Shown piece by piece: positions 562-60,300 of a DNA stretch of 64,000 bases. The notes under the pieces were generated by a model. The model did not search any database, had not been told where the DNA came from, and saw only the letters and a program-made list of their open reading frames with translations. The stretch lies in the sequence record PQ451753.1. The stretch is one strand, 5' to 3'. How positions within the stretch are numbered: the first letter of the stretch is position 1; every line of letters starts with the position of its first letter. Both the position numbers and the translations under genes were made by a program.

Positions 562-590
562 TTTAAAGATATATATCATTCCAGTGTATT
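562..590 (+). promoter_or_regulatory. putative phage early promoter (GATATATATCAT at 568-579)
   Basis: Motif recurs upstream of gene clusters at 5530, 12260, 20610, 52458 and 60279; analogous to the TATATTAC early motif of phiKZ. Confidence 0.65.
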
Positions 591-591
591 A

Positions 592-619
592 AGGAGAACT
601 TCGGTTCTCCTATTTTTTT
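592..619 (+). terminator. intrinsic terminator-like hairpin
   Basis: AGGAGAAC-TTCG-GTTCTCCT followed by ATTTTTTT. Confidence 0.8.
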
Positions 620-659
620 ATTTGCTTAAATATGGTTTGTTAATAAAGGAATTAATAAG

Positions 660-5515: not shown

Positions 5516-5550
5516 TGAAAAATAATGCGGATATATATCATTTAGAGGAT
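5516..5550 (+). promoter_or_regulatory. putative early promoter
   Basis: AAAAATAATGCGGATATATATCAT (core 5530-5541). Confidence 0.7.
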
Positions 5551-10349: not shown

Positions 10350-12050
10350 ATGTCAATGGTAATCGAATCAGCAGTACCAACTACCTCTACACCTACTAAA
10401 GTACCATACGCACTTATTGAAGGCGTATACCAACAGGTGGCAGATAACCTGTGGCTGAAGTCACGTAACGAAAAAACTCTAATCATGCATGGCACTAAAG
10501 GCATTGAATTAGAAGACTTCCAAAACCTACTGACGGATGAAGACCGTCAAATCATGCAGTGTAACTGTTGTAAAGATTTCTTCCGTAAGTACTCTAACCT
10601 GCTTGCAGTAACCGAAAGCGGTGAAGTAACCTCAGCACTATTCCGCGATGTGAAAACTTCTAACCAACATGCTAAGGCGTTATTCAATAAGTTGGCAGAC
10701 ATTGTTGAATCAGGCAAACCGTCACACTTCGTAGATGAACGTTTACGTGGCGCAGGTCACCAGTCTGTGAAAATCATTCTAGGTGTTAAAGAAGCAGGTG
10801 GCTATGGACACTACCATGGTTACATTGCACGTCAAGACATCTCACGTAAAGCATCTTTCGAAAATTCTGTTCTCGGTGTTAACAACCTGATGTCTAAGTA
10901 CAAAGGTTTGGACAAGCTGGTTGAAGCGATGGAAGCTATCTGCCCTGCGTTCATGCAAGAAGAACGTATCTCACTAACGCAGCGTGAATACTTCGAGTCA
11001 TTCACTCAACTACTGGGTAAGTTCCGTGATGCTAAGAACAACGGTGGCCTTTCTACTGAACATGTTCTTGCACAACTGTGGGCAGGTAACGTTAATGGTC
11101 TGTCAATGATTCTTCACTTCAATGGCAATGTTCTAGGTAACCTTATCGAGAACTTCCTTGACTCAGGCGATTACGAAAAAGCAGTATCTCTGTTCCTAGA
11201 GCGTACTGACCCACTCGTGTACAAAGCGCGTGAAACTGACAAGGTGACTAAGCAACAGCTTGAGCAAGCACACAAGTACATCAAAGAGAACGGTTACGGC
11301 TCTGCCCTAATCCACTCTATTGCAGCCCCTGATGAAATCGAAGCTATCTGGCGTACAACTCCAGTTGAAACTCCAGTAGAAGAAGAGAAGTCAGCAAGCG
11401 ATGCGGCGGATGACTTGTTTGCAGAAAAGATCGCGGAAGTATCTAAGGAACAGGCTAAACCTGAACCTAAAGAAATCTGGCCAGGCGCTAAGAACATTAC
11501 ACGTACTGACTTCATTCATCGTGTACTGGGTGAAGCGGAACGTATCTGGCTTAATCTGTCAGGTTATGAGAAGTTGGGTATCCTAACCACACCTACTGAT
11601 AAAGAAGCGAAGCCTGTGTTCTTCTGGACAGAGCAACGCCCATCGCGTCCATACGTAACGTGTATTCCACATGAACGTGTTCCTGTTGGCATGTACGGTT
11701 TCCGTGCAGGTTATGTTGAACTGGACTCGGTGGCAGAACTACCTTGGTTCCATGAAGACATCAAGATGGAAGGTGCGTTATCTCCGGGTTGGATGATGTG
11801 TTTCGCATTTGAACCAGTTGAGTCAGTACTGTACCACGGTCTGCAATCATTCGGCGGTGCACTGAAAGGTGATCTACAACCATACCGTCTAGGTATTGAC
11901 TCTGTAGTGAATAGCCGTCAGGTGTTCACTCGTGATGGTGAGAAGGGTACCACGTACTTGCAATTATCACGTCAATGGGAATTCCGTAACGTTCGTGTAT
12001 TGAACAAAGACGGCTCTCAGTCTGTTTACAACATCATGGATGTTGACTAA
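10350..12050 (+). CDS. conserved large-phage hypothetical protein with CNCC motif
   Basis: SD AAGGA before the ATG at 10350; RQIMQCNCCKDFFRKYSNL motif. Confidence 0.85.
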   Translation: MSMVIESAVPTTSTPTKVPYALIEGVYQQVADNLWLKSRNEKTLIMHGTKGIELEDFQNLLTDEDRQIMQCNCCKDFFRKYSNLLAVTESGEVTSALFRDVKTSNQHAKALFNKLADIVESGKPSHFVDERLRGAGHQSVKIILGVKEAGGYGHYHGYIARQDISRKASFENSVLGVNNLMSKYKGLDKLVEAMEAICPAFMQEERISLTQREYFESFTQLLGKFRDAKNNGGLSTEHVLAQLWAGNVNGLSMILHFNGNVLGNLIENFLDSGDYEKAVSLFLERTDPLVYKARETDKVTKQQLEQAHKYIKENGYGSALIHSIAAPDEIEAIWRTTPVETPVEEEKSASDAADDLFAEKIAEVSKEQAKPEPKEIWPGAKNITRTDFIHRVLGEAERIWLNLSGYEKLGILTTPTDKEAKPVFFWTEQRPSRPYVTCIPHERVPVGMYGFRAGYVELDSVAELPWFHEDIKMEGALSPGWMMCFAFEPVESVLYHGLQSFGGALKGDLQPYRLGIDSVVNSRQVFTRDGEKGTTYLQLSRQWEFRNVRVLNKDGSQSVYNIMDVD

Positions 12051-12064
12051 CAGTAACTATATCT

Positions 12065-12092
12065 AGGGAGGCATTGCCTCCCTTATTTTTTT
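12065..12092 (+). terminator. intrinsic terminator
   Basis: AGGGAGGCA-T-TGCCTCCCT inverted repeat (a viable loop needs the innermost pairs open) followed by TATTTTTTT. Confidence 0.8.
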
Positions 12093-12104
12093 GTGAGGTG
12101 AAGA

Positions 12105-12260
12105 ATGTCTAAGCGCATATACCGAACTGACCGATGGAAAAGAAACACACCGTTTTACCGTACGGTTAATCGACGATTGGCAAACTTGTTGGGTTTACCA
12201 CGTGACCGTTATGGTGTAGCACTCTCTCCTTTATCGGTACAGGAACGAAAGTCAAAATAG
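12105..12260 (+). CDS. 51-aa basic protein (not in ORF track)
   Basis: SD GAGGTG; MSKRIYRTDRWKRNTPFYRTVNRRLANLLGLPRDRYGVALSPLSVQERKSK*. Confidence 0.6.
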   Translation: MSKRIYRTDRWKRNTPFYRTVNRRLANLLGLPRDRYGVALSPLSVQERKSK

Positions 12261-12280
12261 ATATATTTCATTAAAAGGAC
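12253..12280 (+). promoter_or_regulatory. putative early promoter variant
   Basis: GATATATTTCAT at 12260-12271 (one mismatch to consensus). Confidence 0.55.
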
Positions 12281-12312
12281 ATATGTACAATAAAAATAAA
12301 AGGAGGTGTATT

Positions 12313-12429
12313 ATGTCTAATGGAAATGAATACTTAGGATGGATTATGGATTTACTTGCAGTGACTGGAGGCTTGGCAATTGTCGTGTACTTCATTTACC
12401 TGTGGTGGATTGGTAGAAACCTAAAGTAA
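12313..12429 (+). CDS. 38-aa single-pass membrane peptide (not in ORF track)
   Basis: Perfect SD AAGGAGGT; MSNGNEYLGWIMDLLAVTGGLAIVVYFIYLWWIGRNLK*. Confidence 0.7.
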   Translation: MSNGNEYLGWIMDLLAVTGGLAIVVYFIYLWWIGRNLK

Positions 12430-12497
12430 ATAGTGAAATGGTATAGGTGGGTAATTCCCCTATACCTCTAGAATATATTATCTTGGAGAAAATAACA

Positions 12498-12923
12498 ATG
12501 CAACAATACACACTTACTGCGCTGCAATCTGTAATGGTTCTTATCATGAGCGAAACAAACGAGCCGATGACTGGATACGATACGGCTAAGACAATTACAG
12601 AGCGTGGATATAAGTGGTCACATCAGCAAGTGTACCGTGATTTAAACAGAATGCCTTTAAACCTAACGCATCAACCACAAACTGGAAAACCAGACAAAAA
12701 GCTCTATACATTGATGGACACTGTTGAATATGTACATGACGCTAAAATTATTCCTATTCCGGTTATCGAAGAATACGAACTATTAGACCTAGCCCGTGAG
12801 AAATGGGAACTCTTAAGCAAGCGTCTAGAAACCATCACATTGAAATACGAGCGTGAGTTGATTAAATTTGAAATCAACTACCTTGAACAACTAATTACTA
12901 AACTACAAGCTAAGGCAGCTTAA
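12498..12923 (+). CDS. aphA: PadR-family winged-helix regulator, Vibrio AphA homolog
   Basis: TGYDTAK...SHQQVYRDLNRM...QPQTGKPDKKLYTL vs AphA TGYDITK...SHQQVYRELNKM...EPQEGKPDRKVYSI; C-terminal RLETITLK vs RLERLTLR (reference recalled from memory); SD GGAG. Confidence 0.85.
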   Translation: MQQYTLTALQSVMVLIMSETNEPMTGYDTAKTITERGYKWSHQQVYRDLNRMPLNLTHQPQTGKPDKKLYTLMDTVEYVHDAKIIPIPVIEEYELLDLAREKWELLSKRLETITLKYERELIKFEINYLEQLITKLQAKAA

Positions 12924-12934
12924 CGGAGCTAATA

Positions 12935-13756
12935 ATGAATATCATTAAAATTGACATCAACGATATGGTCGCTACTGAAGAATTGAAAGCGGCAGTGGCA
13001 AAGATTGGGTTTGATGAATACGAATCGCGCTTTAATCAAATCTTTAACGACGATGTACTCGTTGGTGAGTTCCGCGCAATGCTGTCAGAGCAGATGACCG
13101 ATGCGATGGAAGATTGGAAAGTTGTGGTCATTAATGGTGCTAAGTCACATGCTTGGCAAGAAGAGATGGCGTTAGGTAAGTTCCCTGAGCAACCAATCTT
13201 CACTAACTGTGTTAATGGCGAACCGTACATCTACATCGACATGTCAATGATGGATCAGATCCCTAACGACATTCGTGAAGTAACAGTTGACTACATGCTA
13301 GTTAAAGAAGGTGTACACCGTGAACAAATCATCCGTGGCGATATGGTTATCTTCGATGGCACTATTACATGGAAAGGTGTTACTTACACAGCGGAACAAA
13401 TCCATGCGCTAGCCAGTGAGCGCACTATGGAACTGTTGAATGAAGACGGTGAAGAAAACAAGTATGATGAGAAAGACATCATGGTGTTGGTTGACTGTCA
13501 GCATGAGTGGGAACGTGAAGCAACAGTACGTACCTTAGCAGGTCTATCCCATATCTACGAACTTGAACTGTCTGATGTACAACGTAAGCTAGTTGATGAC
13601 TGGGTTAAAGAGTTCTACGAAGATGTTCTTGCACATGCAGATGACGATAACGTAGCACTTACGTCTCCAGTGCTTAACTTTGGTGAAGGTACTAAAGTGG
13701 GCGATATCAAAGACTGGTTAAACACACTGTTCATGTGTGATGTAGAAAATATGTAA
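12935..13756 (+). CDS. zincin-like metallopeptidase family protein with degenerate KExxH motif
   Basis: YIYID...LVKEGVHREQ...G.M...HEWEREA parallels the phage HExxHxxQ...WE.EA family. Confidence 0.55.
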   Translation: MNIIKIDINDMVATEELKAAVAKIGFDEYESRFNQIFNDDVLVGEFRAMLSEQMTDAMEDWKVVVINGAKSHAWQEEMALGKFPEQPIFTNCVNGEPYIYIDMSMMDQIPNDIREVTVDYMLVKEGVHREQIIRGDMVIFDGTITWKGVTYTAEQIHALASERTMELLNEDGEENKYDEKDIMVLVDCQHEWEREATVRTLAGLSHIYELELSDVQRKLVDDWVKEFYEDVLAHADDDNVALTSPVLNFGEGTKVGDIKDWLNTLFMCDVENM

Positions 13757-13761
13757 TTAAG

Positions 13762-13795
13762 ATTGAGAGTGCCTTCGGGTGCTCTCAATTTTTTT
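13762..13795 (+). terminator. intrinsic terminator
   Basis: ATTGAGAGTGCC-TTCG-GGTGCTCTCAAT followed by T-tract. Confidence 0.85.
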
Positions 13796-13862
13796 ATGTC
13801 TCTGTATTGGATTTTAATACAGGTTAGTAGATATTGTGCGAAAACCCGTCAGGAGAATTATA

Positions 13863-14273
13863 ATGCTGCACAATAGTTTTAATGCGGTTGTTCGTATCCG
13901 GTTACGTATGGGGCTAGACATTAACCTTGATGTAACTGAACATTATACGGACGCTATTAAAGCAGCGGTTGGTGTTCGTAATGGCGCACCTCTTTCTAAG
14001 AACGTGCCTAAAGGAACAACCACGTGGACGGCAGATGGACGAAAGGAAGCAATGCAGTTCCTCAAGAAGTTATATGAATTACCTATCATTCATGAACGGA
14101 TTGAAGACATACATTCTAAGTTGCGTAAATTAAATGATCATATGTCCAGTTTAAATATAACGGAAGATATCCATCATATAGAACCTGTGGTTCTTGTGTT
14201 ACGTAACGGATTTCGTTCAAACCACGAGTTATCCAGAAGTGGATATACTAGAAAGTACAACGTCTATAATTAA
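13863..14273 (+). CDS. hypothetical protein
   Basis: ORF track; start at the ATG after AGGAG. Confidence 0.75.
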   Translation: MLHNSFNAVVRIRLRMGLDINLDVTEHYTDAIKAAVGVRNGAPLSKNVPKGTTTWTADGRKEAMQFLKKLYELPIIHERIEDIHSKLRKLNDHMSSLNITEDIHHIEPVVLVLRNGFRSNHELSRSGYTRKYNVYN

Positions 14274-14283
14274 GGAGACATAC

Positions 14284-15219
14284 GTGTCTTACAAAGAAGA
14301 AAAACTACCCGGCTTATTTATCGTCGTAGAGGGCGTCAGTGAGGCGGTCGGGAAATCAACTGTAGTTGACATCCTAAAGGCTAAGTTGGAACAACAGGGC
14401 TATGATGTACTAACGTACCGACAGCCAGGCGGTACACCTGCGGCTGAAGACATGCGTCGCATCGTTAAGAACCCTAACTACGAGGGTGAAGAGTTAAACG
14501 AAGTTGTTGAGTACTTGTTGTTTAGCGCCTCGCGTGAACAGGCAGACCACAACATTGTGCGACCTGCGTTAGAAAATGGCATCATTGTAATCAGTGACCG
14601 TCACTATCTAACCACACACGCATACCAAGGCGAACGTCGTCCAGAGATTGACCGTCTCGTTGCACGTAAGCCAGACATGACTGTGTTCTTAGAAGCTCCG
14701 TTTGAACTTTGTATGGCACGCATGAAAGAACGCGGTGATAGTTGCCGTATTGAAGCACGCGGAGAAGACTGGTTCCGTGAGCAGTACGCTACATTGAAAG
14801 AGCGTATCAATGACGGTATTCATGGTGAGGTGGTAAGAGTTGACACGACCGACTTTAACTCTGACCTATATAAGGAAGGAATCGAAATGGCTGTAAGTAA
14901 AGCGCTTGACCTGCAACAGGCTAAGCAAATGTCACTTGGTCTAGAAGATGAATTCGTCACAATTAAAGAATTCGAACAGCAAGTGTTAGACATCGAAAGT
15001 GTGCGTGTAATTTTACGTGCCGACGTTAACAACAAAGTTAAACCGTATAAACATCGTCGTCTTGATGATGATCATACTTACGGTGACTTAATGGCACGTA
15101 TTGCCAACTTGGTAAATGTTCCGTTTTCAATTGCATCGGTAGTTCGTAACCCGACTAACGATACTATTCTATCGGATGTACGCATCCCTAAGACTGAAGG
15201 AGTCTGTGAGTGTCTGTAA
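14284..15219 (+). CDS. tmk: thymidylate (dTMP) kinase with C-terminal extension
   Basis: FIVVEG...GKST P-loop, RQPGGT, EYLLFSASR, ISDRH, PDMTVFL, RIE; GTG start after AAGGAG. Confidence 0.9.
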   Translation: MSYKEEKLPGLFIVVEGVSEAVGKSTVVDILKAKLEQQGYDVLTYRQPGGTPAAEDMRRIVKNPNYEGEELNEVVEYLLFSASREQADHNIVRPALENGIIVISDRHYLTTHAYQGERRPEIDRLVARKPDMTVFLEAPFELCMARMKERGDSCRIEARGEDWFREQYATLKERINDGIHGEVVRVDTTDFNSDLYKEGIEMAVSKALDLQQAKQMSLGLEDEFVTIKEFEQQVLDIESVRVILRADVNNKVKPYKHRRLDDDHTYGDLMARIANLVNVPFSIASVVRNPTNDTILSDVRIPKTEGVCECL

Positions 15220-20595: not shown

Positions 20596-20663
20596 TAAAA
20601 ATATTTTCAGATATATATTATTTAAGTGATATCACATACAAAACCTTTTAATGGGAGCTTAAC
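20596..20663 (+). promoter_or_regulatory. early promoter-leader module (paralog at 52444)
   Basis: TAAAAAT..TTTCAGATATATAT.AT.TAAGTGA (30/34 identical to 52444-52477) then AAAACCTTT(T)AATGGG leader. Confidence 0.75.
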
Positions 20664-45559: not shown

Positions 45560-45720
45560 GGATCTCCCTTTCCTCTCTTCCTTTCTCCTTTCCTTAACAA
45601 ACCTTACCTCTATCCATCTCTCCTATCCCTCACGCGCGCCTCCAGTCGCGCTCTCCCACACAGGAGAGCCCTCCCAAGGAACCGCTTCAAGGCCGCTATT
45701 AAATAGACGTCTGAGTTAAA
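45505..45720 (-). ncRNA. candidate GGA-repeat small RNA (CsrB/RsmY-like CsrA sponge)
   Basis: 12 GGA motifs on the - strand within 45542-45674, mostly A(N)GGA, one in a hairpin loop; no credible ORF; ends in an intrinsic terminator. Confidence 0.4.
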
Positions 45721-52446: not shown

Positions 52447-52511
52447 AAATCATTTCAGATATATATCATCTAAGTGAACAATCAATCAAAAACCTTTAAT
52501 GGGGATTACTT
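52444..52511 (+). promoter_or_regulatory. early promoter-leader module
   Basis: GATATATATCAT at 52458-52469; near-copy of 20596-20663. Confidence 0.75.
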
Positions 52512-60266: not shown

Positions 60267-60300
60267 AAAAATTATGGAGTTATATATCATATAAAGGTAA
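60267..60300 (+). promoter_or_regulatory. putative early promoter
   Basis: AAAAATTATGGAGTTATATATCAT. Confidence 0.65.

What the first reader, a model, noticed from the sequence alone, without database searches (positions are those of the whole stretch)
12498..12923. Phage-encoded homolog of the Vibrio low-cell-density master regulator AphA
Seen: the protein carries TGYD, SHQQVYRDLNRM and QPQTGKPDKKLYTL, near-identical to the AphA winged-helix recognition helix and wing as I recall them (SHQQVYRELNKM; EPQEGKPDRKVYSI). It also has a C-terminal RLETITLK (~RLERLTLR), but the central dimerisation region appears shortened. It lies just downstream of an early-promoter motif and has its own AATATATTATCTT variant at 12472. 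Known: AphA is the low-cell-density quorum-sensing master regulator, represses luxR/hapR/opaR and activates virulence and biofilm programmes; some Vibrio defences are reported to be induced at high cell density. Inference: a lytic jumbo phage may lock the host in a low-cell-density state, or poison host AphA as a dominant-negative. The GGA-rich RNA candidate at 45.6 kb could act on the same circuit via CsrA.
Basis: partly seen in the sequence, partly recalled or inferred. Interest (0 to 1): 0.85.

Follow-up and report, generated by a model that had tools for sequence, protein, structure and literature searches.

The report
AphA-like PadR regulator in Vibrio jumbo phage
A giant lytic Vibrio phage carries a small DNA-binding regulator whose DNA-reading half closely resembles the Vibrio quorum-sensing regulator AphA, but the rest of the protein is unrelated, its target is unknown, and the quorum-sensing idea has already been published, untested, for the same gene in a sister phage.

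Summary
The ORF is real: window 12498..12923, + strand, 141 aa. It is gene pVpJHP1101_099 ("transcriptional regulator") of Vibrio phage pVp-JHP1101, a 230-kb phiKZ-like phage with a nuclear-shell protein.

The best solved-structure match is V. cholerae AphA (1yg2, E 2.6e-8). Homology covers only the winged-helix domain (residues about 21-74; hhalign 99.5 %, 48 % identity). The C-terminal half has no Vir_act_alpha_C domain, and its "RLETITLK" resemblance is at chance level.

The protein belongs to phrog_13512, a group of short AphA-like PadR regulators. In the phage collection these occur only in Vibrio phages (106 records). The best tree puts it with those proteins, not with host AphA, although a sister relationship cannot be rejected (AU p 0.36).

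It is the middle gene of a conserved three-gene operon behind a recurrent phage promoter motif. The phage genome shows no excess of AphA boxes at any half-site spacing.

It is very probably a dimeric DNA-binding regulator. Host AphA-site mimicry is possible but unproven, and heterodimer poisoning is unlikely. The quorum-sensing hypothesis was already published for pVa-22 gp98 and for prophage homologues. Verdict: a new member of a known kind, moderate interest.

The parts
12065..12093 (+). Intrinsic terminator of the upstream DUF8224-family gene (10350-12050). It marks the 5' boundary of the unit.
   Evidence: An 8-bp stem with 6 G-C pairs followed by a T-run. An equivalent terminator occurs in the relative L008.
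12243..12271 (+). Promoter-like motif. The core GATATATTTCAT lies at 12260-12271, with an A-rich element upstream.
   Evidence: The motif GATATATATCAT at up to 1 mismatch occurs 16 times on the + strand of the 230-kb genome. The 11 sites checked against the annotation each lie 45-130 nt upstream of a + strand CDS. In the window, 18 matches at up to 2 mismatches compare with 7.6 +/- 2.6 expected. The same variant is conserved in pVa-21 and in the 52 %-identical relative L008. The temporal class is not determined.
12313..12429 (+). First gene of the operon: a 38-aa peptide with a single hydrophobic helix.
   Evidence: It is annotated as pVpJHP1101_098. It is conserved in pVa-21, where it is unannotated, and in L008 (shared LTGGL...YLWW...KNLK).
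12440..12466 (+). Hairpin or inverted repeat GGTATAGG-N11-CCTATACC between the peptide gene and the regulator gene.
   Evidence: It is identical in pVa-21. A hairpin of different sequence sits at the same place in L008. Folding energy is not significantly better than shuffles (z -1.7). It occurs once in the genome. Its role is unknown.
12472..12484 (+).
   Evidence: It is present as described, with no recurrence beyond chance. It is only loosely conserved in L008 (AATTATTTAATCT). It is not shown to be a promoter.
12498..12923 (+). The AphA-like PadR-family regulator, 141 aa (pVpJHP1101_099).
12519..12713 (+). Winged helix-turn-helix domain (residues 8-72): helices 8-20, 26-35 and 42-51 (the recognition helix SHQQVYRDLN), and a beta-hairpin wing at 54-72 (GKPDKKLY).
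   Evidence: AlphaFold2 model with pLDDT 96.6. hhalign to AphA covers residues 21-74. Top Foldseek matches are PadR-family structures.
12756..12917 (+). C-terminal helical domain (helices 87-92, 96-110 and 116-140), presumed to mediate dimerisation. It is not homologous to the Vir_act_alpha_C domain of AphA.
12935..13756 (+). Third gene of the operon, 273 aa, function unknown.
   Evidence: Its own GGAG lies 11 nt after the regulator's stop codon. It is conserved at 38 % identity and in the same position in L008. It has no significant Pfam, PADLOC or PDB match, and only a marginal PHROG match (phrog_1339, E 0.004).
13759..13802 (+). Strong intrinsic terminator that closes the operon.
   Evidence: A 15-pair stem followed by a T-run.

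Best explanation
The gene encodes a PadR-family winged-helix DNA-binding regulator of the AphA-like subfamily.

Shown:
- The N-terminal 75 residues are a winged helix-turn-helix. Its recognition helix and wing are nearly those of Vibrio AphA.
- The C-terminal 65 residues form a helical domain unrelated in sequence to the AphA dimerisation domain.
- The gene is the middle one of a conserved three-gene transcription unit: promoter-like motif, 38-aa membrane peptide, regulator, 273-aa protein of unknown function, terminator. The host genome is a nucleus-forming phiKZ-like Vibrio phage.
- The protein belongs to a family that moves as a solo gene among unrelated Vibrio phages and prophages (phrog_13512).

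Inferred:
- It forms homodimers through its own C-terminal helices, as PadR proteins do, and binds an inverted-repeat operator.
- Which DNA it binds is not shown. I judge binding to host chromosomal sites of the AphA type (competition or mimicry, not heterodimer formation) slightly more likely than regulation of phage genes. The reading head is invariant across unrelated phage genomes whose only common factor is a Vibrio host, and this phage has no excess of AphA-type sites.

The confidence of 0.85 is for the claim [quoted passage not shown]. For the target I put about 0.3 on host AphA-regulon mimicry, 0.3 on phage or self regulation, and the rest on other targets.
For: Identity and family:
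- The ORF and its annotation.
- AphA 1yg2 is the best PDB sequence match, at E 2.6e-8.
- phrog_13512 matches at E 1.4e-16.
- hhalign to an alignment of 17 AphA and AphA-like Vibrionaceae proteins gives 99.5 % probability and 48 % identity over residues 21-74.
- The AlphaFold2 model has pLDDT 96.6. Its top Foldseek matches are all PadR-family structures: 8ioi at 6.7e-5 and the B. subtilis PadR-DNA complex 5x11 at 1.3e-4.

Conservation: ten orthologues at 48-92 % identity keep 52 invariant columns in both domains.

Operon:
- The promoter motif recurs 16 times on the + strand, and the 11 sites checked against the annotation lie just upstream of CDSs.
- The same architecture is found in pVa-21 and in a relative whose regulator is 52 % identical.
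- Terminators flank the unit.

Host link:
- All 106 phage records with a match are Vibrio phages, of at least seven genome types (45 to 289 kb).
- Every named cellular relative that I looked up is from Vibrio or Photobacterium.
- The four phage types examined share no annotated neighbour; sequence was compared only for BONAISHI's downstream gene, which is unrelated.
- Y27, H42, Q43, Y46 and G63-K64-P65-D66 are invariant across phage proteins and AphA.

No AphA-type operators in the phage:
- 11 boxes at up to 3 mismatches compare with 13.0 +/- 3.4 expected genome-wide.
- There is no enrichment at any half-site spacing from 0 to 20, and none in the gene's own upstream region.

The phage has a nuclear-shell protein and split RNA polymerase subunits.
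Against: - There is no experimental or expression data for this gene or any homologue in the searched literature.
- The Pfam PadR hit is below its curated cutoff (20 against 27 bits).
- Dimerisation was not modelled.
- The signature helix also occurs in M. tuberculosis Rv1176c. The invariant residues may therefore be structural or phosphate contacts rather than determinants of AphA-box specificity.
- Relative to AphA the wHTH has deletions before and after the recognition helix, and the dimer geometry is probably different. Operator spacing may therefore differ from the AphA box.
- From general knowledge of phiKZ-like phages, host transcription collapses early in infection, which limits what a host-directed regulator can achieve.
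- PadR proteins commonly autoregulate, which would argue for a phage target.
Confidence: 0.85

Rival explanations
1. It is a regulator of phage genes. The protein is a conventional PadR-type repressor that binds an operator in the phage genome, at its own operon or at a class of phage promoters, and helps time phage gene expression. The resemblance to AphA reflects only shared ancestry of the DNA-binding fold.
For: - Autoregulation and control of adjacent genes is the usual PadR behaviour (family knowledge). AphA itself autorepresses (PMC3440409).
- The non-coding DNA around the operon is unusually conserved: about 97 % against pVa-21, compared with 84 % for the 3-kb region around the gene.
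- A positionally conserved hairpin or inverted repeat lies just upstream of the gene.
- A second winged-helix gene, pVpJHP1101_006, sits behind the same promoter motif. This hints at a phage regulatory layer.
Against: - No repeated operator-like element was found. The 12440-12466 palindrome is unique in the genome and its sequence is not conserved in L008.
- There are no AphA-type half-site pairs above chance at any spacing.
- The gene travels alone among unrelated phages, which would each need matching operators.
- From published work on phiKZ, these phages transcribe with their own RNA polymerases inside a protein shell, and no classical repressor is known to act there.
Confidence: 0.3
2. 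It is a dominant-negative poison of host AphA. The phage protein forms mixed dimers with host AphA and inactivates it.
Against: The dimerisation domains are not homologous:
- The phage protein has no PF10400, while an AphA representative has it.
- hhalign stops at residue 74.
- The C-terminal local score is within shuffles.
- The protein is 38 residues shorter than AphA.
Confidence: 0.04
3. It is a generic accessory gene ("moron") with no role in quorum sensing. The regulator binds some other host locus, such as a receptor, defence or metabolic gene, or it has a non-transcriptional role such as DNA occlusion.
For: - The signature recognition helix is shared with proteins from outside the vibrios (8ioi, M. 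tuberculosis). It therefore does not imply AphA-box specificity.
- Several Vibrio species carry extra chromosomal paralogues of 165-178 aa whose roles are unknown.
Against: - There is no PADLOC match.
- The tight restriction to Vibrio phages, together with 46 % identity of the wHTH to host AphA, fits an AphA-related target better than an arbitrary one.
Confidence: 0.25

Closest known systems
AphA of Vibrio cholerae / V. parahaemolyticus (PDB 1yg2; PadR subfamily 1; PF03551 + PF10400)
   Same: - The winged helix-turn-helix aligns with 46-48 % identity.
- The recognition helix is SHQQVYRDLNRM against SHQQVYRELNKM: 10 of 12 residues identical and the other two conservative.
- The wing is GKPDKKLY against GKPDRKVY.
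   Different: - 141 against 179 aa.
- No Vir_act_alpha_C domain, and no detectable homology after residue 74.
- Three short deletions in the wHTH (1, 2 and 4 residues).
- It is phage-encoded.
- In the best tree it does not fall inside the Vibrionaceae AphA clade, although sisterhood is not rejected.
- Its DNA target is untested.
phrog_13512: AphA-like regulators of Vibrio phages and prophages (e.g. vB_VpaS_MAR10 gp016, SSP002, prophage.8 of PMC13670528)
   Same: - The window protein matches this PHROG family at E 1.4e-16.
- Both have the same reading head.
- Both are Vibrio-restricted.
- Both are solo genes among early or DNA-metabolism genes.
- The same untested quorum-sensing speculation is attached to both (PMC13670528).
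   Different: - Only the N-terminal half matches the profile (positions 2-95 of 178).
- The jumbo-phage clade has its own shorter C-terminal domain.
- It sits in a strictly lytic, nucleus-forming phage, so a lysis-lysogeny role is excluded.
gp98 of Vibrio phage pVa-22 / pVa21_098 of pVa-21
   Same: - It is the direct orthologue, at 87 % identity and the same locus.
- PMC12685585 already calls it a PadR-type regulator and suggests AphA-like interference with quorum sensing.
   Different: It comes from a different phage isolate and host species (V. parahaemolyticus against V. alginolyticus). That paper offers no analysis beyond annotation.
Phage-encoded quorum-sensing regulators such as VqmA of vibriophage VP882 (from my own knowledge of the literature)
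   Same: A phage copy of a host quorum-sensing transcription factor family in a vibriophage.
   Different: - VqmA-phage binds a host autoinducer and controls lysis in a temperate phage.
- Here no ligand pocket is evident, the phage is lytic, and no function has been shown.

Membership tests
PadR family (PF03551) | [quoted passage not shown] | tested here: met
   The Pfam hit alone is sub-threshold (E 6.8e-4, 20 bits against a cutoff of 27). Other evidence is clear: PDB sequence matches to AphA and Rv1176c PadR, hhalign at 99.5 %, and top Foldseek matches that are all PadR-family structures.
PadR family (PF03551) | C-terminal helical extension that mediates homodimerisation | tested here: inconclusive
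   Helices 96-110 and 116-140 are predicted with pLDDT above 90. Dimer formation could not be modelled or measured here.
AphA orthologue group (Vibrionaceae low-cell-density master regulator) | AphA-type recognition helix and wing | tested here: met
   10 of 12 residues are identical in the helix, and the GKPD[KR]K.Y wing is present. This feature is shared by the wider subfamily, including M. tuberculosis Rv1176c.
AphA orthologue group (Vibrionaceae low-cell-density master regulator) | C-terminal Vir_act_alpha_C (PF10400) antiparallel coiled-coil domain; about 179 aa in total | tested here: not met
   The protein is 141 aa and has no PF10400, whereas the AphA representative P0060 has it at E 4e-13. 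hhalign ends at residue 74. The C-domain score is within shuffles.
AphA orthologue group (Vibrionaceae low-cell-density master regulator) | Phylogenetic placement within or sister to Vibrionaceae AphA | tested here: inconclusive
   In the ML tree the jumbo clade sits with short phage and prophage proteins, and AphA sits in a separate starred clade of 50 rows. The AU test does not reject a joint clade (p 0.36, delta lnL 16).
AphA orthologue group (Vibrionaceae low-cell-density master regulator) | Binds the AphA box ATATGCA-N6-TGCATAT and represses opaR/luxR, qrr and aphA | not testable with these tools
   The consensus comes from PMC3440409. Only the phage genome could be scanned, and it shows no excess of boxes.
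phrog_13512 (Vibrio phage/prophage AphA-like regulators) | Significant match to the family profile | tested here: met
   E 1.4e-16, 61.8 bits, protein residues 5-91 against profile positions 2-95 of 178. The C-terminal half is not covered.
phrog_13512 (Vibrio phage/prophage AphA-like regulators) | Encoded by phages or prophages of Vibrio | tested here: met
   The window is Vibrio phage pVp-JHP1101. All 106 matching phage records are Vibrio phages.

The most novel reading that the evidence does not exclude
A nucleus-forming lytic jumbo phage makes, from an early promoter, an AphA mimic. The mimic stays outside the phage nucleus, occupies host AphA operators (opaR/luxR, qrr, aphA) as a homodimer, and holds the infected cell in a low-cell-density transcriptional state. 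This would blunt defences or physiology induced at high cell density. The same portable module would be used by many unrelated Vibrio phages.
Probability: 0.15. Interest if true: 0.75.

Novelty: new member of a known kind. Interest (0 to 1): 0.38.

Why it matters
If the protein really occupies host AphA sites, it would be a compact, portable tool by which many unrelated Vibrio phages rewrite the host's quorum-sensing state. It would also be a rare case of a host-directed transcription factor in a nucleus-forming phage. That could relate to the "antivirulence" phenotype reported for the sister phage pVa-22 (PMC12685585), which is relevant to phage use in aquaculture.

As things stand it is a well-annotated homology with an already published, untested hypothesis. 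This analysis adds five points:
- The homology is limited to the DNA-binding domain.
- Heterodimer poisoning is unlikely.
- The family is Vibrio-restricted and moves as a solo gene.
- The phage genome itself carries no AphA-type operators.
- The gene sits in a conserved three-gene operon behind a defined promoter motif.

Tried and rejected
- NCBIfam gave no meaningful hit.
- PADLOC gave no hit for the regulator or its operon partners.
- The first structure model, built on a 10-sequence alignment (pLDDT 79.8), gave no significant PDB match in Foldseek. Against BFVD it found only the pVa-21 orthologue. A model built on a 32-sequence alignment resolved this.
- A scan of genome contigs with the jumbo-clade alignment returned 75 pattern matches, but none was confirmed by tblastn. 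Taxonomic labels therefore came from cluster look-ups instead.
- The window has zero AphA boxes against 4.3 expected, which looked like avoidance. The whole genome shows counts at chance level, so I rejected that idea.
- I considered the palindrome at 12440-12466 as an operator. It is unique in the genome, its sequence is not conserved in L008 (only a hairpin is), and its folding energy is not significant. It remains unassigned.
- I looked for a conserved partner gene. The protein downstream of the homologue in the jumbo phage BONAISHI is unrelated to the 273-aa protein here.
- The 273-aa and 38-aa operon partners have no significant Pfam or PDB annotation, and only a marginal PHROG hit for the 273-aa protein.
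- Rfam has no family anywhere in the window.
- A search for papers on Rv1176c, to map DNA contacts, found nothing in the library.

Full report
**1. What is there**

The window matches Vibrio phage pVp-JHP1101 at 100 % identity over the 3 kb compared, 11500-14500 (PQ451753.1, 230,423 bp; host V. parahaemolyticus). Window position equals record position minus 62,000. Its closest relative in the phage collection is pVa-21, at 84 % DNA identity in this region. The genome encodes a putative nuclear-shell protein and many split RNA polymerase beta-subunit genes, so it is a phiKZ-like, probably nucleus-forming jumbo phage (PMC6472347).

A GGAG lies nine bases upstream. It is annotated in GenBank as pVpJHP1101_099, "transcriptional regulator". 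All ten orthologues found start with the same MQQ(Y/H) residues.

**2.

Evidence that the N-terminal half is AphA-like:
- AphA of V. cholerae is the best match among all solved structures (E 2.6e-8), but the alignment covers residues 12-73 only.
- Profile-profile comparison of the jumbo-phage alignment with an alignment of 17 AphA and AphA-like Vibrionaceae proteins gives 99.5 % probability and 48 % identity. It is again restricted to residues 21-74.
- The generic Pfam PadR model scores only 20 bits, below its 27-bit cutoff.

Evidence that the C-terminal half is not AphA-like:
- The protein has no PF10400 (Vir_act_alpha_C), whereas an AphA representative has it.
- The HMMER second domain scores -0.5 bits.
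- The local alignment score of residues 77-141 against AphA is 35, compared with 28.5 +/- 5.4 for shuffled sequence.

The "RLETITLK ~ RLERLTLR" resemblance is therefore chance-level. The protein is not AphA with a shortened middle. It is an AphA-type DNA-binding head on a different tail.

**3. Structure**

With a 32-sequence alignment, AlphaFold2 gives a confident model (pLDDT 96.6, pTM 0.85). It shows three helices (8-20, 26-35, 42-51), a beta-hairpin wing (54-72), and then helices 87-92, 96-110 and 116-140. The best structural matches in the PDB are all PadR-family proteins: Rv1176c of M. tuberculosis (8ioi, E 6.7e-5) and B. subtilis PadR bound to its operator (5x11, E 1.3e-4). A first model from ten sequences was too uncertain to give significant matches.

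**4. Where it sits in the family**

An exhaustive profile search of 1.84 billion representative proteins found only 310 matches at E <= 1e-3. Almost all of the listed matches carry HQQ[VI]YR and most also carry GKPD[KR]K.
- The nearest relatives are short proteins of 137-163 aa. Those with names are from Vibrio phage D81 or from V. harveyi, V. mediterranei, V. crassostreae/chagasii and V. coralliilyticus genomes.
- The representative of true AphA (P0060, E 1.7e-72 to 1yg2) ranks about 60th.
- The protein matches phrog_13512 at E 1.4e-16. That is the PHROG family to which PMC13670528 assigns its "prophage-encoded AphA homolog".

In a maximum-likelihood tree of 164 proteins, the six jumbo-phage sequences form a well-supported clade. 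That clade groups, weakly, with the short phage and prophage proteins. Vibrionaceae AphA lies in a separate starred clade of 170-190-aa proteins that also contains Rv1176c. An AU test does not reject a tree that joins the jumbo clade to AphA (p 0.36). Direct capture of host aphA followed by replacement of the tail is therefore neither shown nor excluded.

Because Rv1176c from an actinobacterium shares the signature helix and wing, the signature marks a PadR subfamily, not AphA-box specificity as such.

**5. Distribution**

In 50,697 phage records, tblastn finds the family in 106, and every one is a Vibrio phage. They span at least seven genome types:
- 45 kb (Seahorse);
- about 50-54 kb podoviruses of V. 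crassostreae;
- 57 kb and 68 kb phages;
- 75-81 kb SSP002/MAR10-like siphoviruses;
- 79-85 kb phages;
- the 230-kb phiKZ-like group;
- the 289-kb BONAISHI.

Annotated gene neighbourhoods in four of these types show nothing in common. The gene downstream of the BONAISHI homologue, the only neighbour I compared by sequence, is unrelated to the one here. The regulator therefore moves as a solo gene. Its reading-head residues (Y27, H42, Q43, Y46, G63-D66) stay invariant and identical to those of AphA.

**6. Transcription unit**

A motif with core GATATATATCAT and an A-rich element upstream occurs 16 times on the + strand of the genome at up to one mismatch. The 11 sites I checked against the annotation each lie 45-130 nt upstream of a + strand gene. 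In the window it is enriched (18 against 7.6 +/- 2.6 at up to 2 mismatches). One copy precedes RNA polymerase subunit genes (203288), and none precedes an annotated virion gene. That fits an early class by analogy with phiKZ, but no timing data exist.

The copy at 12260 follows the terminator of the upstream gene. It precedes, in order:
- a 38-aa membrane peptide gene (12313-12429);
- a hairpin (12440-12466);
- the regulator (12498-12923);
- a 273-aa gene (12935-13756);
- a strong terminator (13759-13792).

The same layout, including the same promoter variant GATATATTTCAT, the peptide, a hairpin of different sequence and the downstream gene (38 % identity), occurs in pVa-21 and on a 44-kb metagenomic contig whose regulator is only 52 % identical.

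It is only loosely conserved in the distant relative.

**7. Target**

The published AphA box is ATATGCA-N6-TGCATAT (PMC3440409).
- The window has none at up to 3 mismatches against 4.3 expected. Over the whole genome the count is 11 against 13.0 +/- 3.4, and 110 against 111 at up to 4 mismatches. That is chance level.
- No half-site spacing from 0 to 20, in either orientation, is enriched.
- No such site lies in the gene's own upstream region.

If the reading head keeps AphA-like specificity, its sites are therefore not on this phage. This, the solo mobility of the gene and its restriction to phages of one host genus are the arguments for a host target.

The counter-arguments are:
- the subfamily-wide nature of the signature;
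- the indels in the wHTH and the different tail, which may change operator spacing;
- the early collapse of host transcription in phiKZ-like infections (general knowledge);
- the usual self-regulation of PadR proteins.

I therefore commit with high confidence only to [quoted passage not shown]. I put roughly 0.3 on host AphA-site mimicry, 0.3 on phage or self regulation and 0.04 on heterodimer poisoning. The remainder goes to other host targets.

**8. Prior art**

PMC12685585 (November 2025) describes pVa-22, which is 99.35 % identical to pVa-21. [quoted passage not shown] By its number, gp98 should correspond to pVa21_098, which is 87 % identical to the window protein; pVa-22's own sequence was not examined here.

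PMC13670528 (2026) and PMC11295528 (2024) describe prophage-encoded AphA homologues (phrog_13512) and make the same speculation. No paper in the library reports an experiment on any of these proteins.

The finding is therefore a further member of a known, uncharacterised kind.

**9. Cross-reference to 45.6 kb**

The stretch at 45.56-45.70 kb is CT-rich on the + strand, and so GGA-rich on the - strand. It lies between two convergent genes. Rfam finds no family there or anywhere else in the window. Nothing links it to this gene.

Noticed in passing
window 568-579, 5530-5541, 12260-12271, 20610-20621, 52458-52469, 60279-60290 (and 10 more sites elsewhere in PQ451753.1): A phage promoter-like motif with consensus about (A)AAAAT-N6-8-GATATATATCAT-N3-AGTG. 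It occurs 16 times on the + strand, and the 11 sites checked against the annotation lie 45-130 nt upstream of a CDS. One copy precedes RNA polymerase subunit genes. Its temporal class is unknown.
   Followed up: partly
window 568-620: One copy of the promoter motif sits between the stop codon of gene 083 (window 561) and a canonical terminator hairpin (AGGAGAAC-TTCG-GTTCTCCT plus a T-run) only about 12 nt downstream. It is either a dead promoter or the source of a very short hairpin RNA.
   Followed up: no
window 12313-12429: A 38-aa single-helix membrane peptide gene immediately upstream of the regulator. It is conserved in pVa-21 (unannotated there) and in a relative whose regulator is 52 % identical (LTGGL...YLWW...KNLK). 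Its function is unknown.
   Followed up: partly
window 12094-12242: A segment of about 150 bp that carries a very basic 51-aa ORF (12105-12260). It is present here but absent from pVa-21 and from the metagenomic relative, where the terminator abuts the promoter motif. It is a small insertion of unknown origin.
   Followed up: no
L003 5956-6466 (PQ451753.1, outside the window): A second winged-helix gene, pVpJHP1101_006 (152 aa), sits directly behind a perfect copy of the same promoter motif. Its best Pfam hit is Penicillinase_R/BlaI-like at E 2.4e-6, not PadR. It is probably the "gp6" that PMC12685585 calls PadR-type.
   Followed up: partly
window 45560-45700: A strongly CT-rich (GGA-rich on the - strand) non-coding stretch between convergent genes, after a terminator. 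It has no Rfam match, and nothing links it to the regulator.
   Followed up: partly
whole phage genome (L003-L007 plus the window): Pairs of AphA-type half-sites (ATATGCA / TGCATAT) are slightly fewer than a first-order Markov model predicts at most spacings: 33 of 42 z-scores are negative, with typical counts of about 10-11 against 13-14. This may be general avoidance of ATGCAT-like palindromes. The tests are not independent and I did not pursue it.
   Followed up: no
window 10350-12050: The upstream 566-aa gene belongs to phrog_1735 (E 1.5e-85), and its homologue on L008 carries DUF8224. It is conserved next to the operon in all three relatives. Its function is unknown.
   Followed up: no
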